Positions 5,052 through 19,993 of a stretch of DNA of 64,000 nt are shown in pieces. Each line of letters opens with the position of its first letter. Position 1 is the stretch's first letter. The DNA lies in the IMG/VR virus record IMGVR_UViG_3300032931_001151, positions 1 to 64,000 of that record. One strand, written 5' to 3'. The notes under the pieces were generated by a model. It did not search any database. It was not told the origin of the DNA and saw nothing but the letters and a program-made list of their open reading frames with translations. The position numbers and the translations under genes were made by a program.

Positions 5052-5071
5052 TGATATCTCCTTATATTGGA

Positions 5072-5099: not shown

Positions 5100-5103
5100 G
5101 GAT

Positions 5104-6122: not shown

Positions 6123-6396
6123 TTGAGATTCCTTTATAGTAAGGGTATCCTAATTCCATTAAAAGTTGATTATAAGAATCCATTTCGGCTTTTGAAGTAA
6201 TGACTTCTTCCAATGCAAAATCGTATGCTTGACTTCCGTCTTCACAGTCATTCTTTTCCTCTTTAGCCGATTCGGCATTAACCGAAGCAATGAAAATTTG
6301 TTGTCTAAGCCATTCTCCCAGTGACTTAACGGATACAAATTCTCTATCAACAAACCCATCTTTACTTGGAATATATTCTAAATTAATATGATGCAT
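6112..6396 (-). CDS. Hypothetical protein
   Basis: 94 aa, AAGGA RBS. Confidence 0.65.
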   Translation of the reverse strand: MHHINLEYIPSKDGFVDREFVSVKSLGEWLRQQIFIASVNAESAKEEKNDCEDGSQAYDFALEEVITSKAEMDSYNQLLMELGYPYYKGISNGA

Positions 6397-6405
6397 TTGA
6401 TCCTT

Positions 6406-6900
6406 TCAAAACGGTGGCTCATCGGTTTCTTGTAAATATTTAATTTCAATTGGCTTTTCAACTAAATTCATCCCAACAATTTTCTTGTTTTTCTCATATG
6501 CATCAATTGTTCTATCATATCCTTGGATTTCTACATCACCAAATTCATCTATTTCGGATGATAGCCACTTAATATCACCTAAATAGTGAGATTCGTGAGT
6601 TGTTTTATCATACGAAATATACATTGTATTTAATTGTTTATTTGGAATGACCATATATTCACCATTAATGACCCTATAATATTCTTTTCCGTCTTCCTTA
6701 TAAGCTGGTTCCAAAATAACATAAGTTCGTGAAGTAATAGAGCCGATAGTCCATAGTTCAACTAATTTTTCTTTAGTAATTGGTTCTATACTTTTAATAA
6801 TAGCATCCACTTTATTTGAAATATCATCTTGTTGAGTTTTAGTTAGTGGAAATTTCTTAAGTTTCTTTCTAATATTCTTTAATGGCTTCAATAAATCCAT
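6406..6900 (-). CDS. Hypothetical protein
   Basis: 164 aa after promoter 6921-6948; acidic EPPF C-terminus. Confidence 0.7.
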   Translation of the reverse strand: MDLLKPLKNIRKKLKKFPLTKTQQDDISNKVDAIIKSIEPITKEKLVELWTIGSITSRTYVILEPAYKEDGKEYYRVINGEYMVIPNKQLNTMYISYDKTTHESHYLGDIKWLSSEIDEFGDVEIQGYDRTIDAYEKNKKIVGMNLVEKPIEIKYLQETDEPPF

Positions 6901-6920
6901 AATTATTTTTCCTTTGCCAC

Positions 6921-6948
6921 ATTATAGGCATCGGAAGCAACTTGTCAA
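6921..6948 (-). promoter_or_regulatory. Early promoter TTGACA-N16-TATAAT
   Basis: Both boxes are perfect consensus. Confidence 0.85.
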
Positions 6949-6950
6949 GT

Positions 6951-7514
6951 TTATTTAAATAACTTAATTTTTACATTCGTTGATATTATCTCTTTAATAG
7001 CATTTTTTTCATATTTCATATTATGCCATGGAAGCATTTGATCGGATGTATTATAATAATGGCTATTATATCCACTAGCAAATCCATAAAGATTTAATTC
7101 TTTGAAAGAAATATTATTTACTATCCACCTAATCATTGTCAACCCGGTAGTTTCAAATCCACTCCGCATTTTCTTATTTAATAAAATTGTTGAAGGTATT
7201 TTATACGGAATATATTTACTAACATCATTTTGAATTTCTACACTACTCACAAACCAATGTTTTAAATTGGAAATGTCAAAAATTGGAGGAGTATTACAAT
7301 AAAAGTGACAATATACATCCAATTTACTTCCTATATGTATATTGATGTCATTAGATTTAATGTTTTTGTTGAATTCATTAAATCTAATGACAATATCATT
7401 AGAATCTATTGATTTCCCATAATTTGATTTCAAAAGACTATCGGAGTTGCTTACGACTCCGATAGATGCATTATGAAAGAAATTATAGTTACTATTAGTA
7501 AAAAGTAATTTCAA
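6951..7514 (-). CDS. Glycosyltransferase family 29 (sialyltransferase-like)
   Basis: Sialylmotif L-like VVSNSDSLLKSNYGKSIDSNDIVIRFN, GSK, S-like TTGL..LYGF, HYY, and VS-like HNMKYE. Confidence 0.8.
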   Translation of the reverse strand: MKLLFTNSNYNFFHNASIGVVSNSDSLLKSNYGKSIDSNDIVIRFNEFNKNIKSNDINIHIGSKLDVYCHFYCNTPPIFDISNLKHWFVSSVEIQNDVSKYIPYKIPSTILLNKKMRSGFETTGLTMIRWIVNNISFKELNLYGFASGYNSHYYNTSDQMLPWHNMKYEKNAIKEIISTNVKIKLFK

Positions 7515-8323
7515 TTAGATGTAACCGATTTTATAACCCAAAAGTCACATGCTAAATTTGGATTTGTTATATATGAATACGGCATCCAGAAATGTCCATT
7601 TATTCCCCATTTAGGACCCCAAGAATTTCTAATTAAGAATGCTTGTTTTTCATCCGAATAACCAACCGATGTCACGGCATGTCCACCGCAATGTCCTTCG
7701 CCTGGTTGTGGCATTCTTAATATGCCGCCCTTAGACATTTCTTCACTTTCAAAATATTGATACACTTGAAACCCGAATACGAAAGGATGGCCTTGGGCTA
7801 TACAAGCCTTTAGTTCATTTATATTTGTTCCATTAAGTGATGAATACTCTATACTTTTATGTAGCAGTGCATCTTGATAGGCTTGATCTATTGGTTTTGT
7901 AGCAAATTGAGATTCAATATATGGCCAAATTGTTTCTTTACATGCACCATAGACATTGACGGCTTTTATTCCATCACGAATGCAAGCGCCGCAATCTTGA
8001 TTTATAGTTCCTTCCATCATTCTTTCATTATAGTATATGAATAAACGGGAAGGAATGAAATCTAATAATTTATTTTGAGTTATTTGATCGTATTCTATGG
8101 CAGCCGCAATAGCATTTCCAGTACAACTTCCAACTTTACCTTGATCGTAAATAGTTGGTATTACGGTAGATAGATCGGCTTTAGTTGGAACGGGGATATA
8201 TTGAGATACTTTGAACTTCTTATCTCTTGTATCTATCTTATCCTTTTTCCACCCATATACTCTCTTCGTTTCCTTTTTGAAGAGACTCTTAAGAAACTTT
8301 ACCAATTTTTTGAGTAATACCAT
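7511..8323 (-). CDS. Papain-like C1 cysteine peptidase
   Basis: DQGKVGSCTGNA (Gln, Cys), GGHAV (His), IRNSWG (Asn). Confidence 0.95.
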   Translation of the reverse strand: MVLLKKLVKFLKSLFKKETKRVYGWKKDKIDTRDKKFKVSQYIPVPTKADLSTVIPTIYDQGKVGSCTGNAIAAAIEYDQITQNKLLDFIPSRLFIYYNERMMEGTINQDCGACIRDGIKAVNVYGACKETIWPYIESQFATKPIDQAYQDALLHKSIEYSSLNGTNINELKACIAQGHPFVFGFQVYQYFESEEMSKGGILRMPQPGEGHCGGHAVTSVGYSDEKQAFLIRNSWGPKWGINGHFWMPYSYITNPNLACDFWVIKSVTSN

Positions 8324-8330
8324 TTGAAAC

Positions 8331-8359
8331 CCCCTTTATATAGTATATTTATAAAGGGG
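8331..8359 (-). promoter_or_regulatory. T4-type late promoter TATAAATA (8346-8353) inside a 10-bp hairpin that pairs the peptidase RBS
   Basis: Perfect inverted repeat CCCCTTTATA-N9-TATAAAGGGG; the SD-like AAGGGGG lies 6 nt before the ATG. Confidence 0.75.
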
Positions 8360-8373
8360 TATTTAGTTAGAAA

Positions 8374-9036
8374 TTATTCCCAAAAAACTTCGTGCCATAT
8401 ACCGTTAACACGAGTCCCATATCCCATCTTATTAAGAGTGCTACATAAGTCAACATAAACCTCGTTAGATAGATACATACCAACTCCACGAATCCCCGTA
8501 TTACCGTAGTCACCAATAGAGTTTAATGTTGCGAAGTGTTTTCCATCTTTCTTTGCATCTTCAATTCTCTTTAATATTTCGTTTAATAGCCTATCACAAA
8601 CCTTTGATTCTTTATTTACATGCAAGGTGGCAACTTCAACAACTCCAAATTTCTTTTTAAGTCTTTCAAATTCTTCTTTATCCTTTCTATCTTGTGCATC
8701 TTGTTGCGCCTTTTTAATTTCCTCATCTTTTTTCTTTTGAAGATTATCAAAGTACTCAATAAGAGATTTTTTTGAAACTAATGCCTCAATTGGAATAACG
8801 TATGCATCACTATGGCAACCACCAAATGCTAAATCTTCAACTAATACAAAGTATACCGAATCATCTCTAACTTCTAATTCTTGAATTGAATAATAAGACT
8901 CAAAAAATCTATCATAAAGTCTATTATAGATTGGCCTTAAATTCTCATCAATTAGTGATTGAATATCTTTGAGTTGTTGCGAAGCCTTCTTGTAGTAGGC
9001 TTGGATCTCCTTAAGCCGTTCAATAGTAGTAATCAT
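8374..9036 (-). CDS. Hypothetical two-domain protein
   Basis: 220 aa; C-terminal domain resembles the 19994-20305 product. Confidence 0.7.
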   Translation of the reverse strand: MITTIERLKEIQAYYKKASQQLKDIQSLIDENLRPIYNRLYDRFFESYYSIQELEVRDDSVYFVLVEDLAFGGCHSDAYVIPIEALVSKKSLIEYFDNLQKKKDEEIKKAQQDAQDRKDKEEFERLKKKFGVVEVATLHVNKESKVCDRLLNEILKRIEDAKKDGKHFATLNSIGDYGNTGIRGVGMYLSNEVYVDLCSTLNKMGYGTRVNGIWHEVFWE

Positions 9037-9257
9037 GTAATGTCCTTCCCTAAATTTCTTGCCTCGTACTTATCAATACTTTTTTTGCAAATATAGGTGA
9101 TATATAGGCTTACGGCTATATTCAAAGCATCTTTTGATGGTATTTCTCCAATAGTTTTTGACTCCACTACGGCGAAATTTATACAAAGTATAGCATATAA
9201 ACCAAAAACCAATAAACCAATGGTTTGAGCATAATAATTGAATTTTTCAAAAGTCAT
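9033..9257 (-). CDS. Hypothetical membrane protein
   Basis: Two hydrophobic segments; ATGA overlaps. Confidence 0.6.
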   Translation of the reverse strand: MTFEKFNYYAQTIGLLVFGLYAILCINFAVVESKTIGEIPSKDALNIAVSLYITYICKKSIDKYEARNLGKDIT

Positions 9258-9487
9258 TGAGTTTCCTTATCAAGAATTTGAAGGATTTCTACTAGAAATG
9301 GATGGGTTTCTTCCATTTTAGACATGGTTTCATTTGAAGAATCCGCTTGCTTTTCATAGAATCCTTTAACATAGATAGACGGATTAGTTTCAAGAATATC
9401 TATGCAACATTGAAGGTTTCTTTGCTCATCCATGTATCTTTGAAGAATTTCTAGTCTACCCATTTTAGTATCCCGTACATTTTGCAA
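9254..9487 (-). CDS. Hypothetical protein (start uncertain)
   Basis: ORF in the run. Confidence 0.55.
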   Translation of the reverse strand: MQNVRDTKMGRLEILQRYMDEQRNLQCCIDILETNPSIYVKGFYEKQADSSNETMSKMEETHPFLVEILQILDKETQ

Positions 9488-9569
9488 TTGCTAGTAGAAT
9501 TAAAAACATTATTACTATTCCTATCATTAAATAGTTAGGATTTCCTTTAAATTTCATTTTAATTTCCTT

Positions 9570-9980
9570 TTAGTTTCTTGAAACTTTAAAATTCCAATTG
9601 CAATAGTCTCTACTATTGACATCAATTGGACCATATTGATTTAATAAACTATCAACATCATTTTGACATTGGGATATTATATTTGGAATTTGTGATTTGT
9701 CAATGGAGAAAATATATCCGAGTTGCTCTTTAATTCCATATTCTATAGGCCGTTCATTGTATGTTGCTCTACAAATCCTCACCAATACTTCTTTTGATGG
9801 TCTATATCCCTTAACGTCTTCATTATAAATTTCATTAGTTTCTTGTATTTGAAGAATTACCACCGACAATGCGGGATTATCGGGGATTGGCTCCAAAACA
9901 TCTATTAGATAGAAATCCAAGTACCCCTTGGACCACTTTGAACTACAAGATGTATTTACGGAGTAGATGTAATGTTTCAT
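9570..9980 (-). CDS. Hypothetical protein
   Basis: 136 aa abutting the upstream stop. Confidence 0.7.
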   Translation of the reverse strand: MKHYIYSVNTSCSSKWSKGYLDFYLIDVLEPIPDNPALSVVILQIQETNEIYNEDVKGYRPSKEVLVRICRATYNERPIEYGIKEQLGYIFSIDKSQIPNIISQCQNDVDSLLNQYGPIDVNSRDYCNWNFKVSRN

Positions 9981-10346
9981 TTATTTTCCCAAACTATTCA
10001 TTAAAGTGATTGCACAATTCCATCCAAAGTCGGTAGGCTCAAATCGAGCAATTGGAGAATGATACTTCTTATTGTTACAAAAGTGTGGATCTAACTTTTG
10101 TTGACACAACAATTTAACTAATGTAATGTCTTTGTATAACAAAATCTTATTGCCCTCATAATTAGTACAATCCGGGTAATTTATAAGCATTAGAAGATAA
10201 TCGCCAATTTGTTGAACTTTGACAATCTTATAGTTGCTTGGATTCGGATTAGGTAACTTTGATTGCTCTTCATAACTAGGAATTCTAGAAGAGCAAATTG
10301 ATTGCTCAAAAGTTGATCTTGATCTACTTCCTGGACCTATTCCCAT
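9981..10346 (-). CDS. Conserved phage hypothetical protein
   Basis: PNPNP..YPDCTNYEGNKILLY..LDPHF..SPIARFEPT; start moved to the ATG after AAGGAG. Confidence 0.75.
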   Translation of the reverse strand: MGIGPGSRSRSTFEQSICSSRIPSYEEQSKLPNPNPSNYKIVKVQQIGDYLLMLINYPDCTNYEGNKILLYKDITLVKLLCQQKLDPHFCNNKKYHSPIARFEPTDFGWNCAITLMNSLGK

Positions 10347-10375
10347 AATAAACTCCTTATATACTCTTATTGTAA

Positions 10376-10702
10376 TCAACTTTTAGGAAAAGTCAATGGG
10401 TTTCCATCGTTATCCCAAAGATCCTCGGAAGTCAATGGATCAATGTAACGACTAACTTGTCCATTCTCTAGGGCAATGAATGAACACGATTCACGACGAT
10501 AGAACGCTCCAAATTGGTCAATAAATCCTTGTTCTTCTTGTCGAACTCGTGGCAACCCTATTTCTCGCATGTGCCAAAGGATATGGGAATGTCTCCAACC
10601 CGTATAAACCGTGTCAAGATAACAAATTGCAGCTTTAACCAATCTAATATCTTCTACTCTCTTTTTAAGATCTGGCCTCTTGAAATCAATATGTTCAATC
10701 AT
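10376..10702 (-). CDS. Conserved phage hypothetical protein
   Basis: GWRH..QGFID..NGQ..LTSEDLW. Confidence 0.75.
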   Translation of the reverse strand: MIEHIDFKRPDLKKRVEDIRLVKAAICYLDTVYTGWRHSHILWHMREIGLPRVRQEEQGFIDQFGAFYRRESCSFIALENGQVSRYIDPLTSEDLWDNDGNPLTFPKS

Positions 10703-10721
10703 TGTATTTTTCCTTTTTGGA

Positions 10722-10766
10722 ATTATAATGAGTTATTAAGATTGTCAAGACGAAATCTTATAAATA
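10722..10766. promoter_or_regulatory. Divergent promoter pair: early TTGACA-N15-TATAAT (-, 10722-10748) and late TATAAATA (+, 10759-10766)
   Basis: Motifs read directly at the strand switch. Confidence 0.8.
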
Positions 10767-10786
10767 ATGGAATAAGGAAAAATCAT

Positions 10787-10978
10787 ATGGACTCCGACAA
10801 ACTAATGAATGAATTGAAGAAGGCTTGGATTAAACTTGACAATTCATTGGTAGCCCGTACACCTATAGAGGGACCTGCGATGGTTGAAGAAACCCCCAAA
10901 GAGGAACCCGAAGCACAACAAATAGCGGATAACCTAAGAACTCACTCAAAAGACATTCGTTTAGGCGATTTTAACTAA
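10787..10978 (+). CDS. Small late protein (putative head-internal protein)
   Basis: Start moved to the ATG at 10787 after the late promoter and AAGGA; ELKKAW motif. Confidence 0.65.
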   Translation: MDSDKLMNELKKAWIKLDNSLVARTPIEGPAMVEETPKEEPEAQQIADNLRTHSKDIRLGDFN

Positions 10979-10989
10979 AAGGACATAAA

Positions 10990-11451
10990 ATGTATCATAA
11001 TATAGAAGACCAAGATAAACTTAAGACACTTGAAGCAGCTTGGAGACAAGTTAATGAAACTAATACTAATGCAATAGAAACTTCTATAATAGAAGTATTT
11101 AATGCTTGCCCAATTGAAAATATTAAAATAGTTGCACATGATGTAGGAGAACAACAAGTTGAAGATGGCCCTTCAGCAACTTGGAATATATATAACATAG
11201 TAGTTCAACTTCCTATTGAATTACAAGGAAAATTAAAAGAATTCAATGATGTTGAAATTGACAATTCTCTTAAATCTCTATTAAATGCTCACTCAGAGAA
11301 AATAGGACAATTTATTCAAAATATTACAGATCTTATCAATGAAACCATAGGAAGTGTTGAAGACGTTGCTTTTGATAAAATTCAAGGAGAAGTCTTCATT
11401 AAAGTATATGGGGAACATAATGTTGGTGGTAATGAAATGGACTATGTTTAA
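10990..11451 (+). CDS. Acidic late protein (putative virion or internal protein)
   Basis: LEAAWRQVNE near the N-terminus; in the late operon. Confidence 0.65.
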   Translation: MYHNIEDQDKLKTLEAAWRQVNETNTNAIETSIIEVFNACPIENIKIVAHDVGEQQVEDGPSATWNIYNIVVQLPIELQGKLKEFNDVEIDNSLKSLLNAHSEKIGQFIQNITDLINETIGSVEDVAFDKIQGEVFIKVYGEHNVGGNEMDYV

Positions 11452-11633
11452 TGGTAAACAACGATAATATAGTTTTTAATGTTAAAGAAGATGATGCTCA
11501 TAGCATTGTCTATCTTCACCATGGAAAAGTTATCGTTGCGGTTGGAAGTGATAAATACGATGCAATAGAAAAACTAAATGCACAAATAGCAATAGAAGAA
11601 AGTAGAGAAGACAATGATACTTACAGAAGATAA
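11451..11633 (+). CDS. Hypothetical protein
   Basis: TAATG coupling. Confidence 0.55.
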   Translation: MVNNDNIVFNVKEDDAHSIVYLHHGKVIVAVGSDKYDAIEKLNAQIAIEESREDNDTYRR

Positions 11634-12156
11634 ATCCGATTCAATTTGTTATATGATTCGAGTTGATAAAGCAACCGAAGATAAACTAATTGCCATGCAA
11701 AAAGAACTAGGATTAAAAGGTGAGTTAGAAGATAAATTTCATACTACTATAAGATACATAACGACTAATAAGTCGCCCGATATGCTTATAGGATTCCTTG
11801 AAGGTAGTAAATTGCCTACTTTAAAAGGAAAGATATATGGATTTGACATATTTGGTCCAACTAAAGATACTTTAGTTCTAAGACTTGAATCAAAAGAAAT
11901 TAACGATTGGTTTAATAGATTTGATAAGTTTGCTATAAAGAATGGATATCCAAAATCTAAATATCCGACTTATAAGCCACATATATCGTTAACAATTGAC
12001 CCCGATATTGTTAAACCTAAATGGAAAGATAAGTATGCATTTGAGGTTAAGTTCAATATACATGTTGTTAGTAAGAACTATAAAGATATTTGGGTTAAAG
12101 ATGCTACTAAAATATCTTTAAAAGAATCTATAATAGAAACATTCATAAAAAGTTAA
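11614..12156 (+). CDS. 2H phosphoesterase, Acb1/T4 gp57B-like (candidate anti-CBASS nuclease)
   Basis: Two HxT/S motifs, KFHTTIRY and YPTYKPHISL, in a context like gp57B (HSTICY / YTPHITL). Confidence 0.75.
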   Translation: MILTEDKSDSICYMIRVDKATEDKLIAMQKELGLKGELEDKFHTTIRYITTNKSPDMLIGFLEGSKLPTLKGKIYGFDIFGPTKDTLVLRLESKEINDWFNRFDKFAIKNGYPKSKYPTYKPHISLTIDPDIVKPKWKDKYAFEVKFNIHVVSKNYKDIWVKDATKISLKESIIETFIKS

Positions 12157-12166
12157 AGGAAATAAC

Positions 12167-13153
12167 ATGGACGATAATACATACGAACTAGCCAAGGCTT
12201 GGAAACAAATTGAAGAGAACTTGGTTCAATCGGTTAATCTTAATCCGGAAATGAATGAGAATGCGTTTAACTTTAATGTAGTTAAAAAGCAACTTGACGA
12301 TTTATATACAAATGTTGGCAAATCGGCTCAAAGTGCCGAATTTGCTGGAAATGATGTGTGGCTAATTTCCGGAAACTATCCTTTAAAAAACATAGGAGCA
12401 TCGGCTATCTTCATATATGCTAATGATGATGTATATAGAGGTAGTGATACTTTTGATTTATTTAAGAGAGTCGTTCTACCTTCCACCGAATATGAAGATG
12501 CTACACTTGAGAGCGGATCTATTGAAGAAGTACTTAGTAAAGCACAAGAGATAAATGTCGGAAAGGCACTTAAAGAAGTTGATTCTCCCGATGAAGCCAT
12601 TGCTAGAAGAGATAGAGATGAACAATCTAAGAACAACTTAAAAACTATTAAATTAGATGGACGAGTTGCCGATTTACTTGATATGAATATGAAGGAAATG
12701 GGTAATACGGAGTGGACCGATGGATATCAAGGTGATGGGCCATATCTACCCAAAGAAGTTGAAGACTATATACTAAATGCTATTGGTAATGATACCGAAG
12801 AACCATTTAAGGTTAGATTCATCAAATACGGATCATCAAGCCCATTAGAAGGTCGTGGAAGCCCCCTTTATGTTGAATATGAACAAGAAACTACCCCAGG
12901 ACATACCGAGTTTGGATTAAGAGATATGACCGAGCAAAGCGAATTGCCAATTGGAGAATTACATAAGTTAGTTAAAGTAAACGATTTAGGTAGTACTATT
13001 GACATTAGTTTTGGAATTGTTAGAATAGCAACAATTGAGCAAGAAGAGGCTGGGTGGGATATTTACATCCACGGGAAGCCACTTGCCGTTACTTATAATA
13101 CAAAGGAAGATGCCTTTACGGCACTTGTTAATTATCTAAATGATGAGAAATAA
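12167..13153 (+). CDS. Acidic late protein (putative internal head protein)
   Basis: ELAKAWKQIEE at the N-terminus; several [ILM]-x-E sites. Confidence 0.65.
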   Translation: MDDNTYELAKAWKQIEENLVQSVNLNPEMNENAFNFNVVKKQLDDLYTNVGKSAQSAEFAGNDVWLISGNYPLKNIGASAIFIYANDDVYRGSDTFDLFKRVVLPSTEYEDATLESGSIEEVLSKAQEINVGKALKEVDSPDEAIARRDRDEQSKNNLKTIKLDGRVADLLDMNMKEMGNTEWTDGYQGDGPYLPKEVEDYILNAIGNDTEEPFKVRFIKYGSSSPLEGRGSPLYVEYEQETTPGHTEFGLRDMTEQSELPIGELHKLVKVNDLGSTIDISFGIVRIATIEQEEAGWDIYIHGKPLAVTYNTKEDAFTALVNYLNDEK

Positions 13154-13901
13154 AATATTACAATATTTCATAGAAGGTAAAACTGCTGGGGATAAGTACG
13201 GGGATTTTGTAATTCAAAATGGGAAGATGTTATTTAATAGAGTGGGCGGATTGGGTGCTAAATATCAAGACAATACATGGGCACCCGAAAAAAGAGGAAT
13301 TTGGGCATTTCCATATCCTTTATTTGAATCATTTTTTATAAGTGGTCCATTTAGTATGCCTTCCCAACATAGTCCTAAAAAGTCAAAAATAGTAAAAATT
13401 GATTCAAAATTAAGAAATCAATTAGAGAAAAGACTAAGAGGATTAAAAACAAAAATGGAAATCGGTATATCAAAATTAAAATCAACCGAAGATAACCCAT
13501 TCCCAAAATATTTTGGTCACGAAAAATATGAAATTGAAGATTTAGAAAAAGCATTAAAAGATGGTGAAATAGATTCAATTAAATTAAGTTCTTCAATGAA
13601 ACATAAGTATAAACCAACAAATAAAATTCGTAGATTTTATTGGGGTGGCCCAATTTGGGCAAGATTTGCACCAAAAGGAGAAGAAGTTACTGAAAATGGT
13701 TGGTACAAATATGATGATATATATAGTTATATCAAAGAATTAAGAAAATATTTATTTGAGTGGAGAAGAGATTCATTATATGGAAGTAAAGATAATAAAG
13801 GAATTTTGTATAAGATAGGAGTTCCAATAGCATCTAAAGATGCTAACATGAGCATGGATCATTTGGAAGTATTTTTACCTATGAGCGGAAATCGTGACTG
13901 A
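13140..13901 (+). CDS. Late hypothetical protein with the shared N-terminal motif
   Basis: MRNKILQYFIEG. Confidence 0.7.
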   Translation: MMRNKILQYFIEGKTAGDKYGDFVIQNGKMLFNRVGGLGAKYQDNTWAPEKRGIWAFPYPLFESFFISGPFSMPSQHSPKKSKIVKIDSKLRNQLEKRLRGLKTKMEIGISKLKSTEDNPFPKYFGHEKYEIEDLEKALKDGEIDSIKLSSSMKHKYKPTNKIRRFYWGGPIWARFAPKGEEVTENGWYKYDDIYSYIKELRKYLFEWRRDSLYGSKDNKGILYKIGVPIASKDANMSMDHLEVFLPMSGNRD

Positions 13902-14205
13902 AATTCAACATCTATACGATAGAGCAACTAAAATTCTAACTAATATAGAATGTATAAAGTCTATTACTCAAAAAATTATTGATGAAAAAGAAATGGGAAT
14001 CAAAATAGATAAGAAAGAAATTCTTAATTTAGCAAGTATAATAAAACAACTTATGGAAAGATATAATGCTATTCTTGAATGTATTGCTAAATCGCATATA
14101 TCATTTGAAGAGAAAGAAACTATTATGGATATGCTAGATACTTCTAGAAAATCTATAATGTCACTTAATAATGCTATTAATGTGGTTCAAAAAAAGATTA
14201 TTTAA
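13894..14205 (+). CDS. Hypothetical coiled-coil protein
   Basis: GTG start overlapping the upstream gene. Confidence 0.6.
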   Translation: MTEIQHLYDRATKILTNIECIKSITQKIIDEKEMGIKIDKKEILNLASIIKQLMERYNAILECIAKSHISFEEKETIMDMLDTSRKSIMSLNNAINVVQKKII

Positions 14206-14549
14206 CAATAAGAGTATAATATCCTATTAATGTCGTTAAAATCAAACTTATAAGCAAATACACCCATTATTTTTTTATTGTGATATAAATTGGTATATGA
14301 CAATCCTTCTACTGAATATTCTTCCAAGTGAAAACATTCTAGTATATCTCTATGAAATTCATCAAACGGGCCAAAAGATGGATATGTCATTAAAATATGA
14401 TGCCGGATCCATCTTTCTTTTAATGTATCAATTTGCTTCATATCTTTAAATAATGCTTCTTGAAAATCTATTAATTTATTGTCAAGTTGATTGACATCTT
14501 CTTGAAGTTTATTGTAATCAATGTTCACTTGATTTCCTCTATAGAACAA
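14202..14549 (-). CDS. Hypothetical protein (start uncertain)
   Basis: Ends convergently with the + island. Confidence 0.6.
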   Translation of the reverse strand: MFYRGNQVNIDYNKLQEDVNQLDNKLIDFQEALFKDMKQIDTLKERWIRHHILMTYPSFGPFDEFHRDILECFHLEEYSVEGLSYTNLYHNKKIMGVFAYKFDFNDINRILYSYC

Positions 14550-15178
14550 TCAATGGTTGCTCTACAAGTTACGAATGGATTTGGAATGTCGCCATCATGT
14601 GACAATGTACTAGTAATTAAACTCTTAAATTTTCCATTATCGTGACGGACATAGTATCTTTTAGCAACACTACCATCTCTTTTAAGTAAACAAATAGTAA
14701 AAGTAGGCATAGATTTAAAAAACTTATTAACGGAATCATTTTCGTCCATAAGAAACTCTATAGTTATAGAGTTTTGCGAATCAAATTTAATACTTCTTAC
14801 AAAACAAGTAACCAATTCATTCATCTTTCTATGCTCTTGTTGTTCTTCAATAGCGAAAAGATATGTTCTCAAGGGATCCTTAATTTTAAATTGATTAGTG
14901 ATAGTTGAATGGGAGATTGTTGAAGTTTCAAGATTTTTTATTACATTACTTTTCATTCTATTGAATTCATCAAAAGAAACCGTTATATTATTTTTAGTTA
15001 ATCTAGATTTAACAATGAATATTTGAATATCACCAATGGAGTTATAAATTATCATACCCGGCATATTAGACATGACTATAATTCCTACAAGATCCGCCTC
15101 TTGCACTTTTTTAAGTTGGTCTGGATCTTTATCAAAGTCATCTAGGTTAGCATACAAGTAAATAGTAGGTTCTCTCAT
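14525..15178 (-). CDS. Hypothetical protein; C-terminal half resembles a gp19-type tail tube
   Basis: ITIEFLMDENDSVNKFF..TICLLKRDGSVAKRY..LSHD..VT; N-terminal domain similar to that of 746-1405. Confidence 0.45.
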   Translation of the reverse strand: MREPTIYLYANLDDFDKDPDQLKKVQEADLVGIIVMSNMPGMIIYNSIGDIQIFIVKSRLTKNNITVSFDEFNRMKSNVIKNLETSTISHSTITNQFKIKDPLRTYLFAIEEQQEHRKMNELVTCFVRSIKFDSQNSITIEFLMDENDSVNKFFKSMPTFTICLLKRDGSVAKRYYVRHDNGKFKSLITSTLSHDGDIPNPFVTCRATIDCSIEEIK

Positions 15179-15381
15179 TTTATTTCCTTCCAAATATATT
15201 GTTTAGTCCCGTATTGTGAATCATATCTTATATCCAAAACTTTATGTTTCAAAGCGTCATCATAAACTTCTAATTTACCATGATGACATCCGAGAAGATA
15301 TGCGGGAATTCCAATAACTAATAGGCCCAAGCCAAGTCCACATATAAGAATAAATGGAAGTAATCCGTCAAGATTAAACAT
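15175..15381 (-). CDS. Small membrane protein
   Basis: N-terminal TM segment; GAGGA RBS. Confidence 0.65.
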   Translation of the reverse strand: MFNLDGLLPFILICGLGLGLLVIGIPAYLLGCHHGKLEVYDDALKHKVLDIRYDSQYGTKQYIWKEIK

Positions 15382-15393
15382 ACGTTATTCCTC

Positions 15394-16272
15394 TCAAAGA
15401 ACCCAAGTCGAGTGTTCACCATCAAAATTCATGGCTTTCTTATTGTGAAACTCATAAGAGTTAGTTTTAGTATCCAAAATAAACGGATTGACATACTTCT
15501 TATGGTCGGAACTATCAGTACTGCCAACACAAATAAATTCAATGTCACCAATCTTCTTATTGGCAACTCTATGAAAATGTCCATAGTACCACATACTAGG
15601 CTTCTTGATTAGCCCATTGTATAACATAGTTAATGGAGCATCCCCACAATCTAAATGATTAACTTCTCCATAACCATCTTCTACTATATATCGTTGAACT
15701 GACATATATAGTGCGGGATGTCCCTCCATGCCAATACCTAATCCGGAAGGGCATGAATGGGTAATAATAGTATCCATGCCACCAACACTGTTCCATTCCT
15801 CAATAGCCTTCTTTACTTGCTTATTAAGGATATAATTGGTAGTTTCTTTATCAATAGACCCTTCTTGCTTTCGATCTGCGTGAAGTCCACCACCCAAGAA
15901 TCCAATCTTATACCGATCAATATCTATCCAAGACCCACGAGGTTGATAATGGATATTGTACTTATCTTTCCACTCTTGATGGTTTGACTTTTTAATGAAT
16001 TCTCCAGAGTCATGATTTCCATCACATACTAGAACTTTCTTATGGAACTTCAATGCCGAGTACTCATAAGTGCATCCAATGGTACTTTGATTCTTTATTA
16101 ATTTGCTATTGAATGTGTCCAAATTAGCAAAAATGCTCGGGAAGAATCCGAAGTCGCCCACTTGAATTACAAAATTATACTTAATGTTGAGATTAAAATC
16201 AACATTCTTCATAACCGAGTTAAGATCCGCCCATTTACCGTGAACATCACCCAAGATTAATATTTTAGCCAT
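15394..16272 (-). CDS. Calcineurin-like metallophosphoesterase
   Basis: GDVHG, QVGDFG, GNHD, ITH, GHFH. Confidence 0.92.
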   Translation of the reverse strand: MAKILILGDVHGKWADLNSVMKNVDFNLNIKYNFVIQVGDFGFFPSIFANLDTFNSKLIKNQSTIGCTYEYSALKFHKKVLVCDGNHDSGEFIKKSNHQEWKDKYNIHYQPRGSWIDIDRYKIGFLGGGLHADRKQEGSIDKETTNYILNKQVKKAIEEWNSVGGMDTIITHSCPSGLGIGMEGHPALYMSVQRYIVEDGYGEVNHLDCGDAPLTMLYNGLIKKPSMWYYGHFHRVANKKIGDIEFICVGSTDSSDHKKYVNPFILDTKTNSYEFHNKKAMNFDGEHSTWVL

Positions 16273-16305
16273 CTTTAGTTTCCTTTAATTGCTTTTCTAC
16301 ATGGC

Positions 16306-16333
16306 ATTATAAGGAACATTGAAACAAATGCAA
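16306..16333 (-). promoter_or_regulatory. Early promoter TTGCAT-N16-TATAAT
   Basis: Intergenic, upstream of the phosphoesterase. Confidence 0.65.
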
Positions 16334-16343
16334 TTGAAATCTT

Positions 16344-16667
16344 CTATATTTTGCGACACTTGAAATCACCACTAGGAGTTGTTATAACCTCGGCTTTAGT
16401 GCCGTTAAAGTCATAAAATTGTTTAGTTTCCATAAGTTTGCCAAATTGATCATAAACTTCTACACAATTATCTTTAATTCCTTCAATTCCTCTTATGGCC
16501 ATTCCATAATAAAGATTGTTGTATTGTAATCCTTCAACTATTTCTTTAGTACCACAAATCATAGAATTATATGTGTTGGTACTAACTAATATAGAACTCG
16601 GAATTCTTCCTATTGATTTTGATAATTCTTCAAATTGCTTTTGAACTTTTTCTACAAGCTCGTTCAT
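16344..16667 (-). CDS. Hypothetical protein
   Basis: Start moved to the ATG at 16667 (ATGA overlap). Confidence 0.65.
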   Translation of the reverse strand: MNELVEKVQKQFEELSKSIGRIPSSILVSTNTYNSMICGTKEIVEGLQYNNLYYGMAIRGIEGIKDNCVEVYDQFGKLMETKQFYDFNGTKAEVITTPSGDFKCRKI

Positions 16668-17158
16668 AGGTGATCCGTAATATAATAGCATGCCCTATCT
16701 AAATCAGTATAAAGAGGAATCTCATATCTCTTACATACAATATCAACATTACCCTTCCTCCAAAACCCATTAGGGCAACAAACCAATAATTTTCTACTAT
16801 TCGCATACAACCCAAGTTCTAATAGGCTAATTGGGGATTTTGTATTTGGATCAAAGTACATTAGAATCTTTTTAGAAATATCTAATGCGGTTAATTCCCA
16901 ACTAACTTGTTCATTGAATTGAGGATTATCAATGGATTGCTCCCAAGACACGTCCCAATCAACTCTTCGTGGATTAAATATGTAATATTGTTCTTTGAAA
17001 GTTTTAATTTCATTGGCAATATGTTCTGTAACTTTTGCTTGCCAATCTTCGGCAGATCCTTGTTCAATACTTCCAGCTAAAAATATAGATTTAGGAACTA
17101 CCCCTTTAATTTTTTGGAACGGAAGAGCATTTGGTGGCTTAATGATAGTTAGTGGCAT
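16664..17158 (-). CDS. Nucleoside 2-deoxyribosyltransferase-like protein
   Basis: IFLAGSIE..DWQ, FNPRR.DW, QVSWEL, SPISLLELGL, GFWRKGNV. Confidence 0.85.
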   Translation of the reverse strand: MPLTIIKPPNALPFQKIKGVVPKSIFLAGSIEQGSAEDWQAKVTEHIANEIKTFKEQYYIFNPRRVDWDVSWEQSIDNPQFNEQVSWELTALDISKKILMYFDPNTKSPISLLELGLYANSRKLLVCCPNGFWRKGNVDIVCKRYEIPLYTDLDRACYYITDHL

Positions 17159-17168
17159 TTAAAAATCC

Positions 17169-17624
17169 TTATTGTTTGAATTCTACTAATGTATGGTCTT
17201 CACCTTCAAGTTCCTCTTCGATTATCTTTGAAATAATGTCCCAATTTCCTCGGGCAAGTCCCGCTCCTATTTTTGGATAAGCAATTCTTTTTCCACTAAA
17301 TTGCCTCTTAACTTCTTTGAAACATTTTCTCAAGGCATCATAATCGGCATTTACTTTATTAATATTACATCCATATTGTCCATATGCATTAACAACTATA
17401 AACTTAACATTCTTTCTTTCAATTTCAATTACTCCGATAGTTCCTAATTTGCTTGCATCACCACGTTTAGTATAGTTATCAGCAATAGCCGCTTCTGGCA
17501 ACTCAATGGCAATTTGTCGTGCTATACCCAACCCCATAGTATTAAAACAATTACATTGATGTACTATAACATCAAATTGACTTTGAAGTGCCAATTTGAT
17601 TAAGTCTCCTTGAACTACTTTCAT
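17169..17624 (-). CDS. Macrodomain (Appr-1''-p processing / ADP-ribosylhydrolase)
   Basis: GDL, IVHQCNCFNTMGLGIA, VNAYGQY, PKIGAGLARGNW. Confidence 0.92.
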   Translation of the reverse strand: MKVVQGDLIKLALQSQFDVIVHQCNCFNTMGLGIARQIAIELPEAAIADNYTKRGDASKLGTIGVIEIERKNVKFIVVNAYGQYGCNINKVNADYDALRKCFKEVKRQFSGKRIAYPKIGAGLARGNWDIISKIIEEELEGEDHTLVEFKQ

Positions 17625-17815
17625 ATACCTTTCCCCTCTAATTGTTTCTTTTCATTTGCCTCAAGCATCTTATTAATATCTCTACAAATATCTTCAACCG
17701 TCATTCCTTTTGGAAAATTCCAATTAGAAATCCAACTCGGAACAGCATTGAAGTCAATAGTTCCATTTTGAATTTTCTTTTCTACCCATCTATAAAGTTT
17801 ATCTTTCTGGTGCAT
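17621..17815 (-). CDS. Hypothetical protein
   Basis: 64 aa in the coupled run. Confidence 0.6.
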   Translation of the reverse strand: MHQKDKLYRWVEKKIQNGTIDFNAVPSWISNWNFPKGMTVEDICRDINKMLEANEKKQLEGKGI

Positions 17816-18029
17816 TTAGTCTCTTTTCCGCTTCCACCCAATACGATAGAGCCTCGCCCCTAAATCCATCTTGCTCAGCCAACAAATAGGCCAATTCCTC
17901 TACTTGGTTTTTTGGCGGCTTGCATGGAGGCATAGGCACTTCTATTTCCGACTTTGGTAACTCAAACTTCTCTTTGCATTTTCCACAAAAAAATGCTTTA
18001 ATTGCTGAAAGTATATGATGTTTGCACAT
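17799..18029 (-). CDS. DUF2934-like small protein
   Basis: C-terminal VEELAYLLAEQDG..YWVEAEKRL. Confidence 0.6.
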   Translation of the reverse strand: MCKHHILSAIKAFFCGKCKEKFELPKSEIEVPMPPCKPPKNQVEELAYLLAEQDGFRGEALSYWVEAEKRLNAPER

Positions 18030-18030
18030 G

Positions 18031-18375
18031 TTATTTTACCTTTATATCTTTGTATTTACCGTCAAGAACCTCGTACCAATAACCACCGTCTACATATGAA
18101 GGAATTACTTCGCCAATTTGGAAGCGTGTAATATTATCGGGATATCGATGCTCATTCATAATTTTCTTTAGAGCATCATAAGCATCCGTCTTATTATTCC
18201 ATAGGATCATATCCCGTGAATCTTGAATGCCGTCTAATGTTTTCCAAAGCAATGGACGACCCTTTCTACTTTGAATGAGATAAAACACTTCATTATCATT
18301 ACAAGCCCAAAACGCCCATAACTTGGGTAGATGGTCTTTAATAGTTGAACAAGTAGTCGGGTAAGTCTTAGACAT
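18031..18375 (-). CDS. Hypothetical protein
   Basis: 114 aa, AAGGA RBS. Confidence 0.65.
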   Translation of the reverse strand: MSKTYPTTCSTIKDHLPKLWAFWACNDNEVFYLIQSRKGRPLLWKTLDGIQDSRDMILWNNKTDAYDALKKIMNEHRYPDNITRFQIGEVIPSYVDGGYWYEVLDGKYKDIKVK

Positions 18376-18580
18376 TATTAAATTCCTTTAAAAGATAATT
18401 GACGGCGAATTCTTTATTAGAAAGTCCAACATATTTCCGAGAATCTATTGCTTCTTGCGGAACATCAATTTTAACACCATTATTATAGAAGTCAAGAGTT
18501 TGGATATCTAAGGCATTGAATTCTTTGATTATATTAAGAGCAAACTTGAGTGGCTCCAAGTCGTATTTTAGTTTATCCAC
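18368..18580 (-). CDS. Hypothetical protein (probable GTG start overlapping the radical SAM stop)
   Basis: The N-terminal extension in the track is just another frame of the GGCG tail. Confidence 0.55.
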   Translation of the reverse strand: MDKLKYDLEPLKFALNIIKEFNALDIQTLDFYNNGVKIDVPQEAIDSRKYVGLSNKEFAVNYLLKEFNNV

Positions 18581-19661
18581 ATCCACCCCCACACCCTCCA
18601 CCGCATGATGATGGCCTTGATCCACACCCACCACTATGATAATTACAAGTAGTTGACTTCGTGCTACCTAAAAGTTTCTTGTTAACTTCTTCAATTCCCG
18701 ACAACTTCTCAATTATCTTCTTATGAGAAGTTTCTTGAATCTCCTTATGTGCCTCAAATTCTTTTACGAGATTGGCCCATTTCTCATACCAAAAGGCTCC
18801 ATCGGGTGATGTAGGTTTCATATTAGTATCTACCTCTATCTTTCTAGACCAATCAGCATAAAGTTTGCCATTAGGATGGAATACAAGTTCATATAATTTG
18901 TTAAGGTATTGTGATGGTTCCGGATGTGATCCTTTCCACAATATTTGTTTATCTTTGCTAACTTGAATGGTTGTTCGACATACTGGACAATCATTACTTG
19001 ACTCAATACCCCATCTCTTCGTAAATATTTTTTCTACATTAGTTGGAGACACATCACCAGCCTCTTTACGGAATGAAATTGAACCAACTTCCAAATGTAC
19101 GAAAGCGTAGGCTATCATATGTTGAATAAATGCTTCGGTAGTTGAATCATTAATTATACAATTAATATTGAATTGATACTTATTTCCGTAATTCCTTATT
19201 ATATTCTTAATATTTGGCGTTGTTGGAACTACTTTACTCTTAAATATCTTTTGATTTTCATTATCATCAAAATGATGTCTTGAAATATTAATATGAGTAA
19301 CTACTTCCATAAGTTTCAAGTCATCTTTAAGCCAACTTTCTAATGCCGATCCATTAGTAGTTAGAACGACTCTATCCCATTTTCTATTTGAATTCTTTAT
19401 TGTATGTAGAATTGCACCAAGATGACCACTAATAGTTGGTTCCCCGCCAGAAATAGATAATGCCGGACAAATGCTATAAGGAATTTCATTAAATGCTTTA
19501 ATGAGGGATTGGATGTAATCGGAAGGTGGAACTATTTTACCGTCCTTACTATTCCAAAAACAAAACCCGCACTTAGCATTACAAAAGCCAGGTGTAATAA
19601 TGGTGAAATTAGGTTTATGACCACCTTCCGTGTATAAATCGGTTAGAATATTATATTTCAT
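18573..19661 (-). CDS. Radical SAM protein with a Gly/Cys-rich C-terminal tail
   Basis: CNAKCGFC (CX3CX2C), ISGGEPT, TTNG, NISRH; ends HSGGCGSRPSSCGGGCGGGCG. Confidence 0.9.
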   Translation of the reverse strand: MKYNILTDLYTEGGHKPNFTIITPGFCNAKCGFCFWNSKDGKIVPPSDYIQSLIKAFNEIPYSICPALSISGGEPTISGHLGAILHTIKNSNRKWDRVVLTTNGSALESWLKDDLKLMEVVTHINISRHHFDDNENQKIFKSKVVPTTPNIKNIIRNYGNKYQFNINCIINDSTTEAFIQHMIAYAFVHLEVGSISFRKEAGDVSPTNVEKIFTKRWGIESSNDCPVCRTTIQVSKDKQILWKGSHPEPSQYLNKLYELVFHPNGKLYADWSRKIEVDTNMKPTSPDGAFWYEKWANLVKEFEAHKEIQETSHKKIIEKLSGIEEVNKKLLGSTKSTTCNYHSGGCGSRPSSCGGGCGGGCG

Positions 19662-19990: not shown

Positions 19991-19993
19991 ATA

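What the first reader, a model, noticed from the sequence alone, without database searches (positions are those of the whole stretch)
12001..13020. Strong avoidance of CAG/CTG with excess CCG/CGG in sampled core regions, relaxed in the receptor-binding block
Seen (hand counts): 12001-13020 has 2 CAG/CTG against about 20 CCG/CGG, and 38521-39540 has 3 against about 10, although at about 30% GC CWG should outnumber CSG. By contrast 44041-45000 (GH5 tail protein) has about 15 CWG. Inference: selection removes a CWG-containing target of a host restriction, methylation or DNA-modifying defence, largely by synonymous change to CSG. The tail/glycosidase block would then be more recently acquired.
Basis: partly seen in the sequence, partly recalled or inferred. 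Interest (0 to 1): 0.62.

Follow-up and report, generated by a model that had tools for sequence, protein, structure and literature searches.

The report
Phage clade purges the trinucleotide CWG
An uncultured T4-like jumbo phage and its close relatives have removed about 60-70% of all CAG/CTG trinucleotides from their DNA by silent changes in every reading frame, which implies that something reads this 3-base word on phage DNA, although no such agent is known.

Summary
The counts are right. The window has 338 CAG+CTG against 878 CCG+CGG, and CAG/CTG is by far the most depleted trinucleotide (O/E 0.30 in the window, 0.41 over the 214-kb genome). The depletion survives every control. It is present in all three codon phases and in intergenic DNA, and it persists after synonymous shuffling that keeps codon usage (1407 observed vs 2830±33). 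Codon-aware odds ratios are 0.10-0.15 whatever the flanking bases, so the minimal avoided word is CWG itself. About 70% of the context-level deficit reappears as CSG, through silent W→S changes at xCN|G. The trait is clade-specific. Five genomes with ≥76% DNA-polymerase identity share it; about 75 other T4-like contigs, T4 and T7 do not. The claimed relaxation in the tail/glycosidase block is a composition effect. That block has 2.2× more S/T/A/P–G-type opportunities but the same occupancy per opportunity, and no gene of 238 shows a significant excess, so recent acquisition is not supported. The phage carries no detectable DNA-modification genes and also lacks CGCG and 17 hexamer palindromes entirely, so it lives by site avoidance. 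The best reading is weak, additive selection against CWG imposed by an unidentified host DNA-targeting activity. The host and the agent remain unknown.

The parts
1..64000 (.). Window-wide avoidance of the trinucleotide CWG (CAG/CTG), part of a genome-wide (214 kb) trait
   Evidence: 338 CWG against about 1110-1180 expected (O/E 0.30, z -23). The synonymous-shuffle ratio for the window's CDS is 0.44 (z -21.7). Every 4-kb bin of the genome has O/E 0.16-0.67.
12001..13020 (.). First sampled stretch of the finding
   Evidence: 2 CWG against 17.6-19.2 expected (P about 1e-6); 20 CSG against 10.2-11.6 expected.
12167..13153 (+). ORF of 328 aa with no family match, covering most of the first stretch
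   Evidence: No PHROG or Pfam match. CWG opportunities by phase are 38/23/25 and occupied sites are 0/3/0.
38503..39600 (-). ATP-dependent DNA ligase gene, covering the second sampled stretch (38521-39540)
   Evidence: phrog_114, E 1e-73. 3 CWG against 19-20 expected. Opportunities 39/12/34, occupied 0/3/0.
1..42400 (-). Block of about 75 small genes, mostly on the minus strand, with the strongest avoidance
   Evidence: Codon-aware odds ratios: phase 0 0.037, phase 1 0.112, phase 2 0.111; CTG is 3 of 952 Leu codons. Raw O/E is 0.16-0.37.
42468..54434 (+). Tail/glycosidase block said to be 'relaxed': higher raw CWG density but equal avoidance per opportunity
   Evidence: 10.4 CWG per kb against 4.3 in the rest of the window, but 8.1 against 3.7 phase-1 opportunities per 100 codons. 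Odds ratios are 0.20/0.143/0.082; CTG is 0 of 280 Leu codons. The Fisher tests show no significant difference.
43171..46380 (+). 1069-aa virion structural protein holding the third sampled stretch (44041-45000)
   Evidence: phrog_1645 on residues 747-1068. No Pfam or PDB sequence match, so GH5 is not confirmed. Opportunities 103/93/149, occupied 1/34/0.
47005..48285 (+). 426-aa protein with a GH39-like stretch
   Evidence: PF01229, E 3.7e-11, residues 85-198. Occupied CWG 2/16/0 of 38/43/62 opportunities.
48289..53646 (+). 1785-aa protein with a PKD domain, a likely fibre or adhesin
   Evidence: PF00801, E 7.8e-8. Occupied CWG 3/51/7 of 180/156/293 opportunities.

Best explanation
The window belongs to an uncultured T4-like jumbo phage (more than 217 kb, 33% G+C) whose lineage is under DNA-level selection against the trinucleotide C-W-G (CAG on either strand). 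SHOWN: every CWG, whatever its neighbours, is about 7-10 times less likely than codon-matched controls. Sites are removed by whichever silent change the reading frame allows: CAG to CAA, CTG to other Leu codons, xxC|WG to xxT|WG, and xCW|G to xCS|G. The last route produces the CSG excess. The pressure is the same in all 238 genes and in spacers, is symmetric between strands, and is confined to one clade of close relatives. The 1454 remaining sites turn over between relatives, as expected for mutation-selection balance with a small additive cost per site. INFERRED: the cost comes from a sequence-reading activity of the clade's host that acts on double-stranded DNA at CWG. The likeliest candidate is a very-short-site restriction, nicking or epigenetic (methylation- or phosphorothioate-type) defence. 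This fits a phage that has no detectable DNA-modification genes and evades classical restriction purely by site avoidance (CGCG and 17 hexamer palindromes are absent). UNKNOWN: the host and the enzyme. I put about 0.85 on the DNA-level selection part. The 0.42 given below is for the host-defence attribution.
For: Depletion in all three codon phases (O/E 0.06-0.44) and in intergenic DNA (0.24). It persists under codon-usage-preserving shuffles: 1407 vs 2830+/-33, with CSG 2933 vs 1919+/-30. Odds ratios are 0.126/0.153/0.102 for phases 0/1/2 and 0.06-0.22 for every single flank, so there is no longer motif. All 16 NCAGN contexts are below 1. There is no strand, orientation or spacing signal. Genes are homogeneous. 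Five clade members with 76-100% DNA-polymerase identity have O/E 0.39-0.50 and odds ratios 0.08-0.18. About 75 other T4-like contigs have 0.76-1.97, and T4 and T7 about 1. At amino-acid-conserved positions, CWG in non-avoiding relatives corresponds to CAA, CSG or TWG in this genome, and residual sites are not conserved within the clade. Rate decomposition for G000 vs L011 gives CWG-creating changes at 0.42x and CWG-destroying changes at 3.1x the control, with equal total rate. That is the pattern expected from selection rather than hypermutability. Classical restriction avoidance occurs in the same genome: CGCG 0 of about 240, TCGA 0.21, AGCT 0.40, 17 palindromic hexamers at zero while others are enriched. 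Each related lineage has its own avoided set. No C5 or N4/N6 methyltransferase, thymidylate-synthase/dCMP-hydroxymethylase or TGT/DpdA family is present.
Against: No restriction-modification, nicking or epigenetic system with CWG specificity is known to me or turned up in the paper searches. 1454 sites remain, one per 147 bp, so a conventional all-or-none endonuclease would still destroy the DNA. The benefit must therefore be small and additive per site, which is unlike classical restriction avoidance (compare CGCG = 0). The host is unknown, so no cognate enzyme could be sought. The selection-versus-hypermutation test is near saturation and underpowered: about 1.6 SE for L011 and less clear for L014.
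Confidence: 0.42

Rival explanations
1. CRISPR PAM avoidance. CAG (or CTG) is the protospacer-adjacent motif of the host's CRISPR-Cas system. Each motif removed lowers the number of usable protospacers, which gives a weak, additive, strand-agnostic benefit.
For: A 3-nt word avoided on both strands with a small per-site effect and lineage specificity fits PAM logic. PAM depletion in phages has been reported (PMC4246573, PMC12174588). An asymmetric 3-mer (AGC/GCT) is avoided in another T4-like contig whose putative host contigs are normal.
Against: Published PAM depletion is about ten times weaker: log-ratios of about -0.1 to -0.2, against O/E 0.3-0.4 and odds ratios of about 0.1 here. I know of no CRISPR type with a CAG/CTG PAM. 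The host is unknown.
Confidence: 0.12
2. Motif-targeted mutation rather than selection. CWG is a hot spot, for example through cytosine methylation at CWG followed by deamination, or a defence or mutator deaminase acting at CWG. It decays as CpG does in vertebrates. A variant adds selection to avoid the hits, as with APOBEC3 motif avoidance in animal viruses.
For: The depletion is partial and context-free, with the deamination products over-represented: CAA/TTG at 1.22 and CTA/TAG at 1.09. Losses in phases 0 and 2 are the transitions expected from C-to-T change on either strand. Residual sites turn over fast.
Against: At xCW|G the route is W to S at the central base, which deamination cannot produce, and the odds ratio there equals that of the other phases. 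Creation of CWG is slowed to 0.42x, not only loss accelerated. The phage encodes no C5 or N4/N6 methyltransferase. A pure mutational bias of the host would not stop at a clade boundary with similar G+C (L012: 31% G+C, O/E 1.02).
Confidence: 0.12
3. A phage-intrinsic cause. The clade's own enzyme reads the trinucleotide: its gp61-type primase, a host-DNA-degrading nuclease or nickase, or a packaging or replication factor. Fewer sites then mean less self-damage or less fork braking.
For: Primases are the one well-known enzyme class with trinucleotide specificity, and from my own knowledge 5'-CTG-3' is the word of E. coli DnaG. The phage has a gp61-like primase (G000 186450-187577; phrog_47, E 2e-26). 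The trait follows phage phylogeny. A different 3-mer is avoided in another T4-like lineage.
Against: T4 and T7 do not deplete their own primase words (GTT 1.04, GCT 1.21, GTC 0.96) or the host's CTG (0.95-1.19). The primase diverges in step with the polymerase and is not replaced in the clade. The only nuclease-like oddity examined, a 621-aa homing-type protein with a sub-threshold Mom domain, is sporadic and not clade-linked. A 2-3-fold lower site density is a poor basis for telling self from host DNA.
Confidence: 0.1
4. The sum of many longer restriction sites that happen to contain CWG (CTGCAG, CAGCTG, CCWGG, GCWGC and others) in a host population rich in restriction-modification systems.
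For: The genome avoids many restriction-type palindromes. CTGCAG occurs 1 time against 13.9 expected and CAGCTG 2 against 13.9.
Against: Avoidance is equally strong for every 5' and 3' neighbour (odds ratios 0.06-0.22) and in all 16 NCAGN contexts. Given the 3-mer counts, no CWG-containing 4- to 6-mer is further depleted.
Confidence: 0.04
5. A by-product of codon usage, tRNA supply, amino-acid composition or low G+C.
For: CAG and CTG are both G-ending codons, which an A+T-rich genome disfavours. The phage's 18 tRNAs include none for CAG or CTG.
Against: Out-of-frame phases and intergenic DNA are equally depleted. CAG is 4% of Gln while AAG and GAG are 27% and 23% of their families. Shuffles that keep codon usage still give 2x more CWG than observed. 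Relatives with the same G+C have O/E of about 1.
Confidence: 0.02

Closest known systems
Restriction-site avoidance in phage genomes (palindromic 4-6-bp sites, e.g. GATC, GGNCC or CCWGG avoidance; general knowledge of the field)
   Same: A DNA word is under-represented beyond composition and codon usage, in a lineage-specific way, on both strands. It occurs in a phage without DNA-modification genes that also shows textbook avoidance of CGCG, TCGA, AGCT and many hexamers.
   Different: The word is only 3 bp long and elimination is partial: 1454 sites are left and the odds ratio is about 0.1. A classical target such as CGCG is fully eliminated. No cognate enzyme is known. The per-site benefit must be small and additive rather than all-or-none.
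PAM depletion in phages of CRISPR-bearing hosts (Kupczok & Bollback 2014, PMC4246573; P. aeruginosa I-F study, PMC12174588)
   Same: A short (2-3 nt) motif is involved, the selection per site is weak and additive, and the published work uses codon-aware methods of the same kind.
   Different: The reported effects are log-ratios of about -0.1 to -0.2, whereas here 56-70% of sites are gone. No CAG/CTG PAM is known to me.
CpG depletion by methylation-deamination, and APOBEC3 target-motif avoidance in animal viruses (general knowledge)
   Same: A very short motif is partially depleted genome-wide, the transition products are in excess, and sites are recoded synonymously.
   Different: The central-base W-to-S escape route and the slowed creation of sites point to selection on the motif rather than decay of it. 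No methyltransferase or deaminase was identified.
Virus-encoded frequent nickases and methyltransferases of chlorella viruses (Nt.CviPII CCD, Nt.CviQII RAG; recalled from memory, not tested here)
   Same: They show that DNA enzymes with 3-nt specificity exist in virus-host conflicts.
   Different: Those viruses protect themselves by heavy methylation, not by avoidance. Their recognition words differ, and no homologue was sought or found here.

Membership tests
Classical restriction-site avoidance | The word is under-represented after controlling for composition, amino acids and codon usage | tested here: met
Classical restriction-site avoidance | The word equals the recognition site of a restriction-modification system of the host | not testable with these tools
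   The host is unknown: the nearest cultured phages have under 30% polymerase identity, no close relative lies in the genome collection, no sequencing runs were listed, and no CWG system turned up in the papers.
Classical restriction-site avoidance | Near-complete elimination of the site | tested here: not met
   1454 CWG sites remain, one per 147 bp, whereas CGCG is 0 of about 240 expected.
Classical restriction-site avoidance | Specific to a lineage or host | tested here: met
   Only the clade with at least 76% polymerase identity shows it.
CRISPR PAM depletion | A short motif is depleted on both strands irrespective of coding frame | tested here: met
CRISPR PAM depletion | The effect size is comparable to documented cases | tested here: not met
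   Documented log-ratios are about -0.1 to -0.2, against O/E 0.30-0.41 here.
CRISPR PAM depletion | The host carries a CRISPR type that uses this PAM | not testable with these tools
   The host is unknown.
Methylation-deamination decay (CpG-like) | Loss occurs only through C-to-T and G-to-A transitions | tested here: not met
   At xCN|G the escape is A/T to C/G at the central base.
Methylation-deamination decay (CpG-like) | A cognate cytosine methyltransferase is present | tested here: inconclusive
   None is present in the phage (PF00145 and PF01555 absent). The host could not be examined.
Very-short-patch-type biased repair | Only the mismatched central base is converted | tested here: not met
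   Phases 0 and 2 lose the outer C or G instead.
Codon-usage or tRNA bias | The depletion is confined to in-frame codons | tested here: not met
   Phases 1 and 2 and intergenic DNA are depleted, and the shuffle control still shows it.
Avoidance of primase recognition trinucleotides | Model phages deplete their own or the host's primase word | tested here: not met
   In T7, GTC is 0.96 and CTG 0.95. In T4, GTT is 1.04, GCT 1.21 and CTG 1.19.

The most novel reading that the evidence does not exclude
Environmental T4-like phages carry lineage-specific, context-free trinucleotide avoidance: CWG in this clade and AGC/GCT in another contig. This would be the footprint of an undescribed class of host activity that reads only three bases on DNA and imposes a small cost per site. 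Candidates are a frequent nicking or epigenetic (phosphorothioate-like) defence, or a single-strand mutator. The avoided word would then serve as a handle to find the enzyme and to assign hosts.
Probability: 0.3. Interest if true: 0.82.

Novelty: new variant of a known kind. Interest (0 to 1): 0.66.

Why it matters
Motif avoidance is one of the few signals that reveal, from sequence alone, what a host does to phage DNA. All well-documented cases involve sites of 4-8 bp, or very weak PAM effects. A context-free 3-bp word that is purged about eight-fold in odds, uniformly across 238 genes, and only in one clade implies a DNA-reading activity with a specificity not yet catalogued. It also implies a regime of many small costs per site rather than all-or-none restriction. 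If the agent is found it would add a new kind of defence, or of phage self-constraint. The avoided word could also help assign hosts to a large uncultured group of jumbo phages. The analysis further shows how a raw-count contrast between genes can mislead unless codon opportunities are counted, as with the tail block here.

Tried and rejected
- **Codon usage, tRNA supply or G+C artefact:** rejected.
- **A longer hidden motif:** rejected. All flanks are equally avoided, and no CWG-containing 4- to 6-mer is further depleted.
- **Tail block as a recent acquisition:** rejected after counting opportunities.
- **Type III-like orientation bias or pair-spacing effects:** none seen. There are 716 CAG against 738 CTG, neighbour orientation and spacing are random, and the only deficit is below 5 bp, which is trivial.
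- **Alternative genetic code:** a CUA-anticodon tRNA exists, but open frames and stop-codon use show the standard code. No other code was used.
- **Phage-encoded methyltransferase or base-replacement pathway:** PF00145, PF01555, PF00303 and PF01702 are all absent.
- **The 621-aa homing-endonuclease-like protein as the agent:** its Mom match is below threshold (21.2 bits against a 27.1 cut-off). The protein is sporadic, with no close homologues on the relatives' contigs.
- **Primase-word hypothesis:** no precedent in T4 or T7, and the primase is not replaced in the clade.
- **Host identification failed:**
  - No DNA match among phage records.
  - The best cultured phages have under 30% polymerase identity.
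  - The best hit in the genome collection is 42% identical, in a MAG.
  - No sequencing run was listed.
  - The sample accessions appear in no paper.
- **Selection versus hypermutability from pairwise divergence:** the result leans to selection, but synonymous sites are about 87% saturated, so the test is weak.
- **Other:** one script call returned nothing and was repeated.
Full report
**What the window is.** The window is the first 64 kb of a 214,200-bp IMG/VR virus record.

- The genes are T4-like: RNA ligases, ATP-dependent DNA ligase and tRNA nucleotidyltransferase in the window. Elsewhere there are tail sheath, portal, large terminase, UvsW, family-B DNA polymerase, UvsX, gp41-like helicase, gp32, topoisomerase II and a gp61-like primase.
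- G+C is 33%. Simple ORF calling gives 238 genes and 94% coding under the standard code.
- The nearest cultured phages (T4-like cyanophages) share under 30% polymerase identity. This is therefore a deep, uncultured lineage and the host is unknown.
- The 'provirus' label is doubtful. The source contig (217,484 bp) continues upstream of window position 1 with small phage-like ORFs.

| Stretch | CAG+CTG | CCG+CGG |
|---|---|---|
| 12001-13020 | 2 | 20 |
| 38521-39540 | 3 | 10 |
| 44041-45000 | 15 | 31 |

- In the first two stretches 18-20 CWG are expected (Poisson P of 1e-6 to 8e-6).
- The whole window has 338 CWG against 878 CSG, although A+T is twice G+C.
- CAG/CTG is the most depleted of all trinucleotides: O/E 0.30 and z -23 in the window, and 1454 against 3509 expected in the genome.
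- Every 4-kb bin of the 214 kb is depleted, with O/E 0.16-0.67.

**It is not codon usage, amino-acid content or G+C.**

- On the sense strand, CAG and CTG are depleted in all three codon phases (O/E 0.06-0.44). In 13 kb of intergenic DNA there are 51 against 212 expected.
- CAG is 4% of Gln codons and CTG 0.3% of Leu codons, while AAG and GAG make up 27% and 23% of their families.
- Shuffling synonymous codons within genes keeps the proteins and each gene's codon usage. It gives 2830±33 CWG against 1407 observed, and 1919±30 CSG against 2933 observed.
- The escape routes are visible directly. For xCN codons followed by G, the third-base A and T shares fall from about 0.41 to 0.19-0.20, while C and G rise to 0.33 and 0.28. 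For Y-ending codons followed by AG or TG, the C share falls from about 0.25 to 0.02-0.04.
- The CSG excess is therefore the compensation product of phase-1 sites, about 71% of the context-level deficit.

**The minimal avoided word is CWG itself.** Codon-aware odds ratios against matched control contexts are 0.126 (phase 0), 0.153 (phase 1) and 0.102 (phase 2). They stay between 0.06 and 0.22 for every single 5' or 3' neighbour. All 16 NCAGN contexts are below 1. Once 3-mer counts are given, no CWG-containing 4- to 6-mer is further depleted. CAG and CTG are equally frequent on the plus strand (716 and 738). Neighbour orientation and spacing are random. The target is thus read on double-stranded DNA or on either strand alike.

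**The tail block is not relaxed.**

- Raw density is higher in 42.4-54.5 kb: 10.4 CWG per kb against 4.3 in the rest of the window.
- These proteins, however, offer 2.2 times more phase-1 opportunities (S/T/A/P codon followed by a G-starting codon): 8.1 against 3.7 per 100 codons.
- Occupancy per opportunity does not differ significantly:

| Codon phase | Tail block | Rest of window | Fisher P |
|---|---|---|---|
| 0 | 0.015 | 0.007 | 0.13 |
| 1 | 0.347 | 0.291 | 0.085 |
| 2 | 0.012 | 0.011 | 0.82 |

- The block has no CTG among 280 Leu codons and no CGCG.
- Across the genome no gene has a significant excess, and the counts are not over-dispersed.
- A modest real difference exists between the small-gene block at 1-42 kb (odds ratios 0.037/0.112) and the structural region at 76-160 kb (0.150/0.170).
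- 'Recent acquisition' of the tail genes is therefore not supported. The 'GH5' label was not reproduced: the 1069-aa protein has only a PHROG 'virion structural protein' match, and its neighbour has a GH39-like stretch.

**The trait is clade-specific.**

- Homologues of the DNA polymerase were used to fetch syntenic loci.
- Relatives with 76-87% polymerase identity (L011, L014, L015, L074) share the depletion. O/E is 0.39-0.50; shuffle ratios are 0.43-0.46 for the two larger loci, L011 and L014, the only ones shuffled; and odds ratios are 0.08-0.18.
- L011, L014 and L015 also lack CGCG altogether. The 3-kb L074 still has one CGCG site.
- Relatives at 43-59% identity, including one with the same 31% G+C, have O/E 0.81-1.07.
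- About 50 more distant T4-like contigs range from 0.76 to 1.97. T4 and T7 are at about 1.
- Each lineage has its own set of avoided palindromes, for example TGCA/AGCT/GTAC in L010 and CCGG/GGCC in L012. That is the usual signature of different host restriction repertoires.

**How the sites are lost.** At positions where both codons keep their amino acids, CWG in the non-avoiding relatives corresponds in this genome to CAA (phase 0), to CCG/CGG or a retained CWG (phase 1), or to TWG (phase 2). Within the clade the residual sites are not conserved: of 81 phase-1 CWG here, only 30 are CWG in the 87%-identical relative. A two-state rate estimate for that pair gives CWG-creating changes at 0.42 times and CWG-destroying changes at 3.1 times the control rate, with equal total rate. 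Selection predicts this pattern. Pure hypermutability predicts unchanged creation and a doubled total. Synonymous sites are close to saturation, so this is a leaning and not proof. An odds ratio of about 0.13 corresponds to a scaled selection coefficient near 2 per site. That is very weak next to the complete removal of CGCG.

**Genomic context for a mechanism.**

- The genome has no CGCG (about 240 expected on both strands), strongly reduced TCGA and AGCT, and 17 palindromic hexamers at zero. Other G+C-rich palindromes are enriched.
- It has no match to C5 or N4/N6 methyltransferases, the thymidylate-synthase/dCMP-hydroxymethylase family or TGT/DpdA.
- The DNA is therefore probably unmodified, and the phage evades restriction by avoidance.
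- By analogy, CWG avoidance most likely answers a host activity that reads CWG. With one site per 147 bp remaining, that activity cannot be a conventional lethal endonuclease. The cost per site must be small and additive, as with inefficient nicking that is mostly repaired, an epigenetic-sensing defence, or a similar process.

**Rivals.**

- PAM avoidance fits the weak additive logic, but documented effects are about ten-fold smaller.
- Methylation-deamination or a deaminase footprint fits the excess of CAA/TTG (1.22). It cannot make the central W-to-S changes.
- A biased short-patch repair would change only the central base and so fails for phases 0 and 2.
- A phage-intrinsic reader such as the primase is conceivable, because primases read trinucleotides. 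T4 and T7, however, do not deplete their own or their host's primase words, and the clade's primase is an ordinary orthologue.
- A union of longer sites, and codon usage, are both excluded by the flank and phase analyses.

**A second case.** With the same codon-usage-preserving test, one other T4-like contig (L023, binned in a Porticoccaceae MAG) shows an equally strong, strand-symmetric, context-free avoidance of a different word, AGC/GCT. Its ratio is 0.43 (z -13), and both words are depleted out of frame. Bacterial contigs of that MAG are normal, at 1.02-1.06. Trinucleotide-level avoidance may therefore recur in environmental T4-like phages.

**Limits.** The host and the agent are unidentified. 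No sequencing runs were listed, so no read-level or population test was possible. Gene calls are simple longest-ORF calls. Relatives could be sampled only as loci of 3-23 kb.

Noticed in passing
window 1-64000 and whole genome G000: CGCG is completely absent from 214 kb (about 240 expected on both strands). TCGA and AGCT have O/E 0.2-0.4. Seventeen palindromic hexamers (e.g. AGGCCT, GGTACC, GACGTC, GGGCCC, CCCGGG, CACGTG, CGTACG, AGCGCT) and GGTCTC and GRGCYC-type words are at zero, while GCCGGC, TCCGGA and GGATCC are enriched. This is a rich classical restriction-avoidance profile.
   Followed up: partly
L023 (Porticoccaceae MAG contig JAYQEC010000001.1) and G001 contigs (L098-L101): Another T4-like contig avoids a different trinucleotide, AGC/GCT, in all contexts and on both strands (shuffle ratio 0.43, z -13). 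Bacterial contigs of the same MAG are normal (1.02-1.06), and a further contig (L101) is at 0.61.
   Followed up: partly
G000 208,273-214,085 (L009:4273-10085), outside the window: There is a cluster of 18 tRNA genes, including one with anticodon CUA (an amber suppressor type). TAG is the rarest stop (15 of 238 genes), but open frames give no sign of recoding.
   Followed up: partly
window 1 and upstream (L069, L070): The IMG/VR 'provirus' call looks like an artefact. The source contig (217,484 bp) continues 3.3 kb beyond window position 1 with small phage-like ORFs. A second, 100%-identical contig extends a further 6 kb, so the genome is longer than the record.
   Followed up: partly
window 43171-46380 and 47005-48285: The 'GH5 tail protein' label was not reproduced. 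The 1069-aa protein has no Pfam or PDB sequence match, only PHROG 1645 on its C-terminal third. The neighbouring 426-aa protein has a GH39-like stretch.
   Followed up: partly
G000 142,081-143,946 (L005:18081-19946, minus strand): A 621-aa protein matches PHROG 'HNH/homing endonuclease' families over its full length and has a sub-threshold Mom-family match at its C-terminus (21 bits against a 27-bit cut-off). Its homologues carry varied homing-endonuclease DNA-binding modules, so it looks like a mobile gene. It has no close homologue on the relatives' contigs.
   Followed up: partly
G000 160.7-162.6 kb, 166.7-167.7 kb, 177.8-180.2 kb, 188.9-196.5 kb: There are several nucleotide-sugar and glycosylation genes: a double GT2 protein next to UvsW, a further glycosyltransferase, four epimerase/dehydratase-type genes, an aminotransferase and an AsnB-like amidotransferase. 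The GT2 and epimerase genes are conserved in relatives with and without CWG avoidance. Their target (DNA, virion or host surface) is unknown.
   Followed up: no
whole genome G000: CTAAG/CTTAG (O/E 0.39-0.48, z -8.8) and CTTA/TAAG (0.69-0.72, z -15) are also under-represented, and AGG/CCT stands at 0.68. An SD-like AAGGA sits 7-12 nt upstream of about two-thirds of starts, so the host probably uses Shine-Dalgarno initiation.
   Followed up: no
window 1-744 and 7511-8323 (minus strand): Precomputed Pfam hits on the source contig label these ORFs Lipase_3 and Peptidase_C1. These are unusual accessory genes among the small early-type genes.
   Followed up: no
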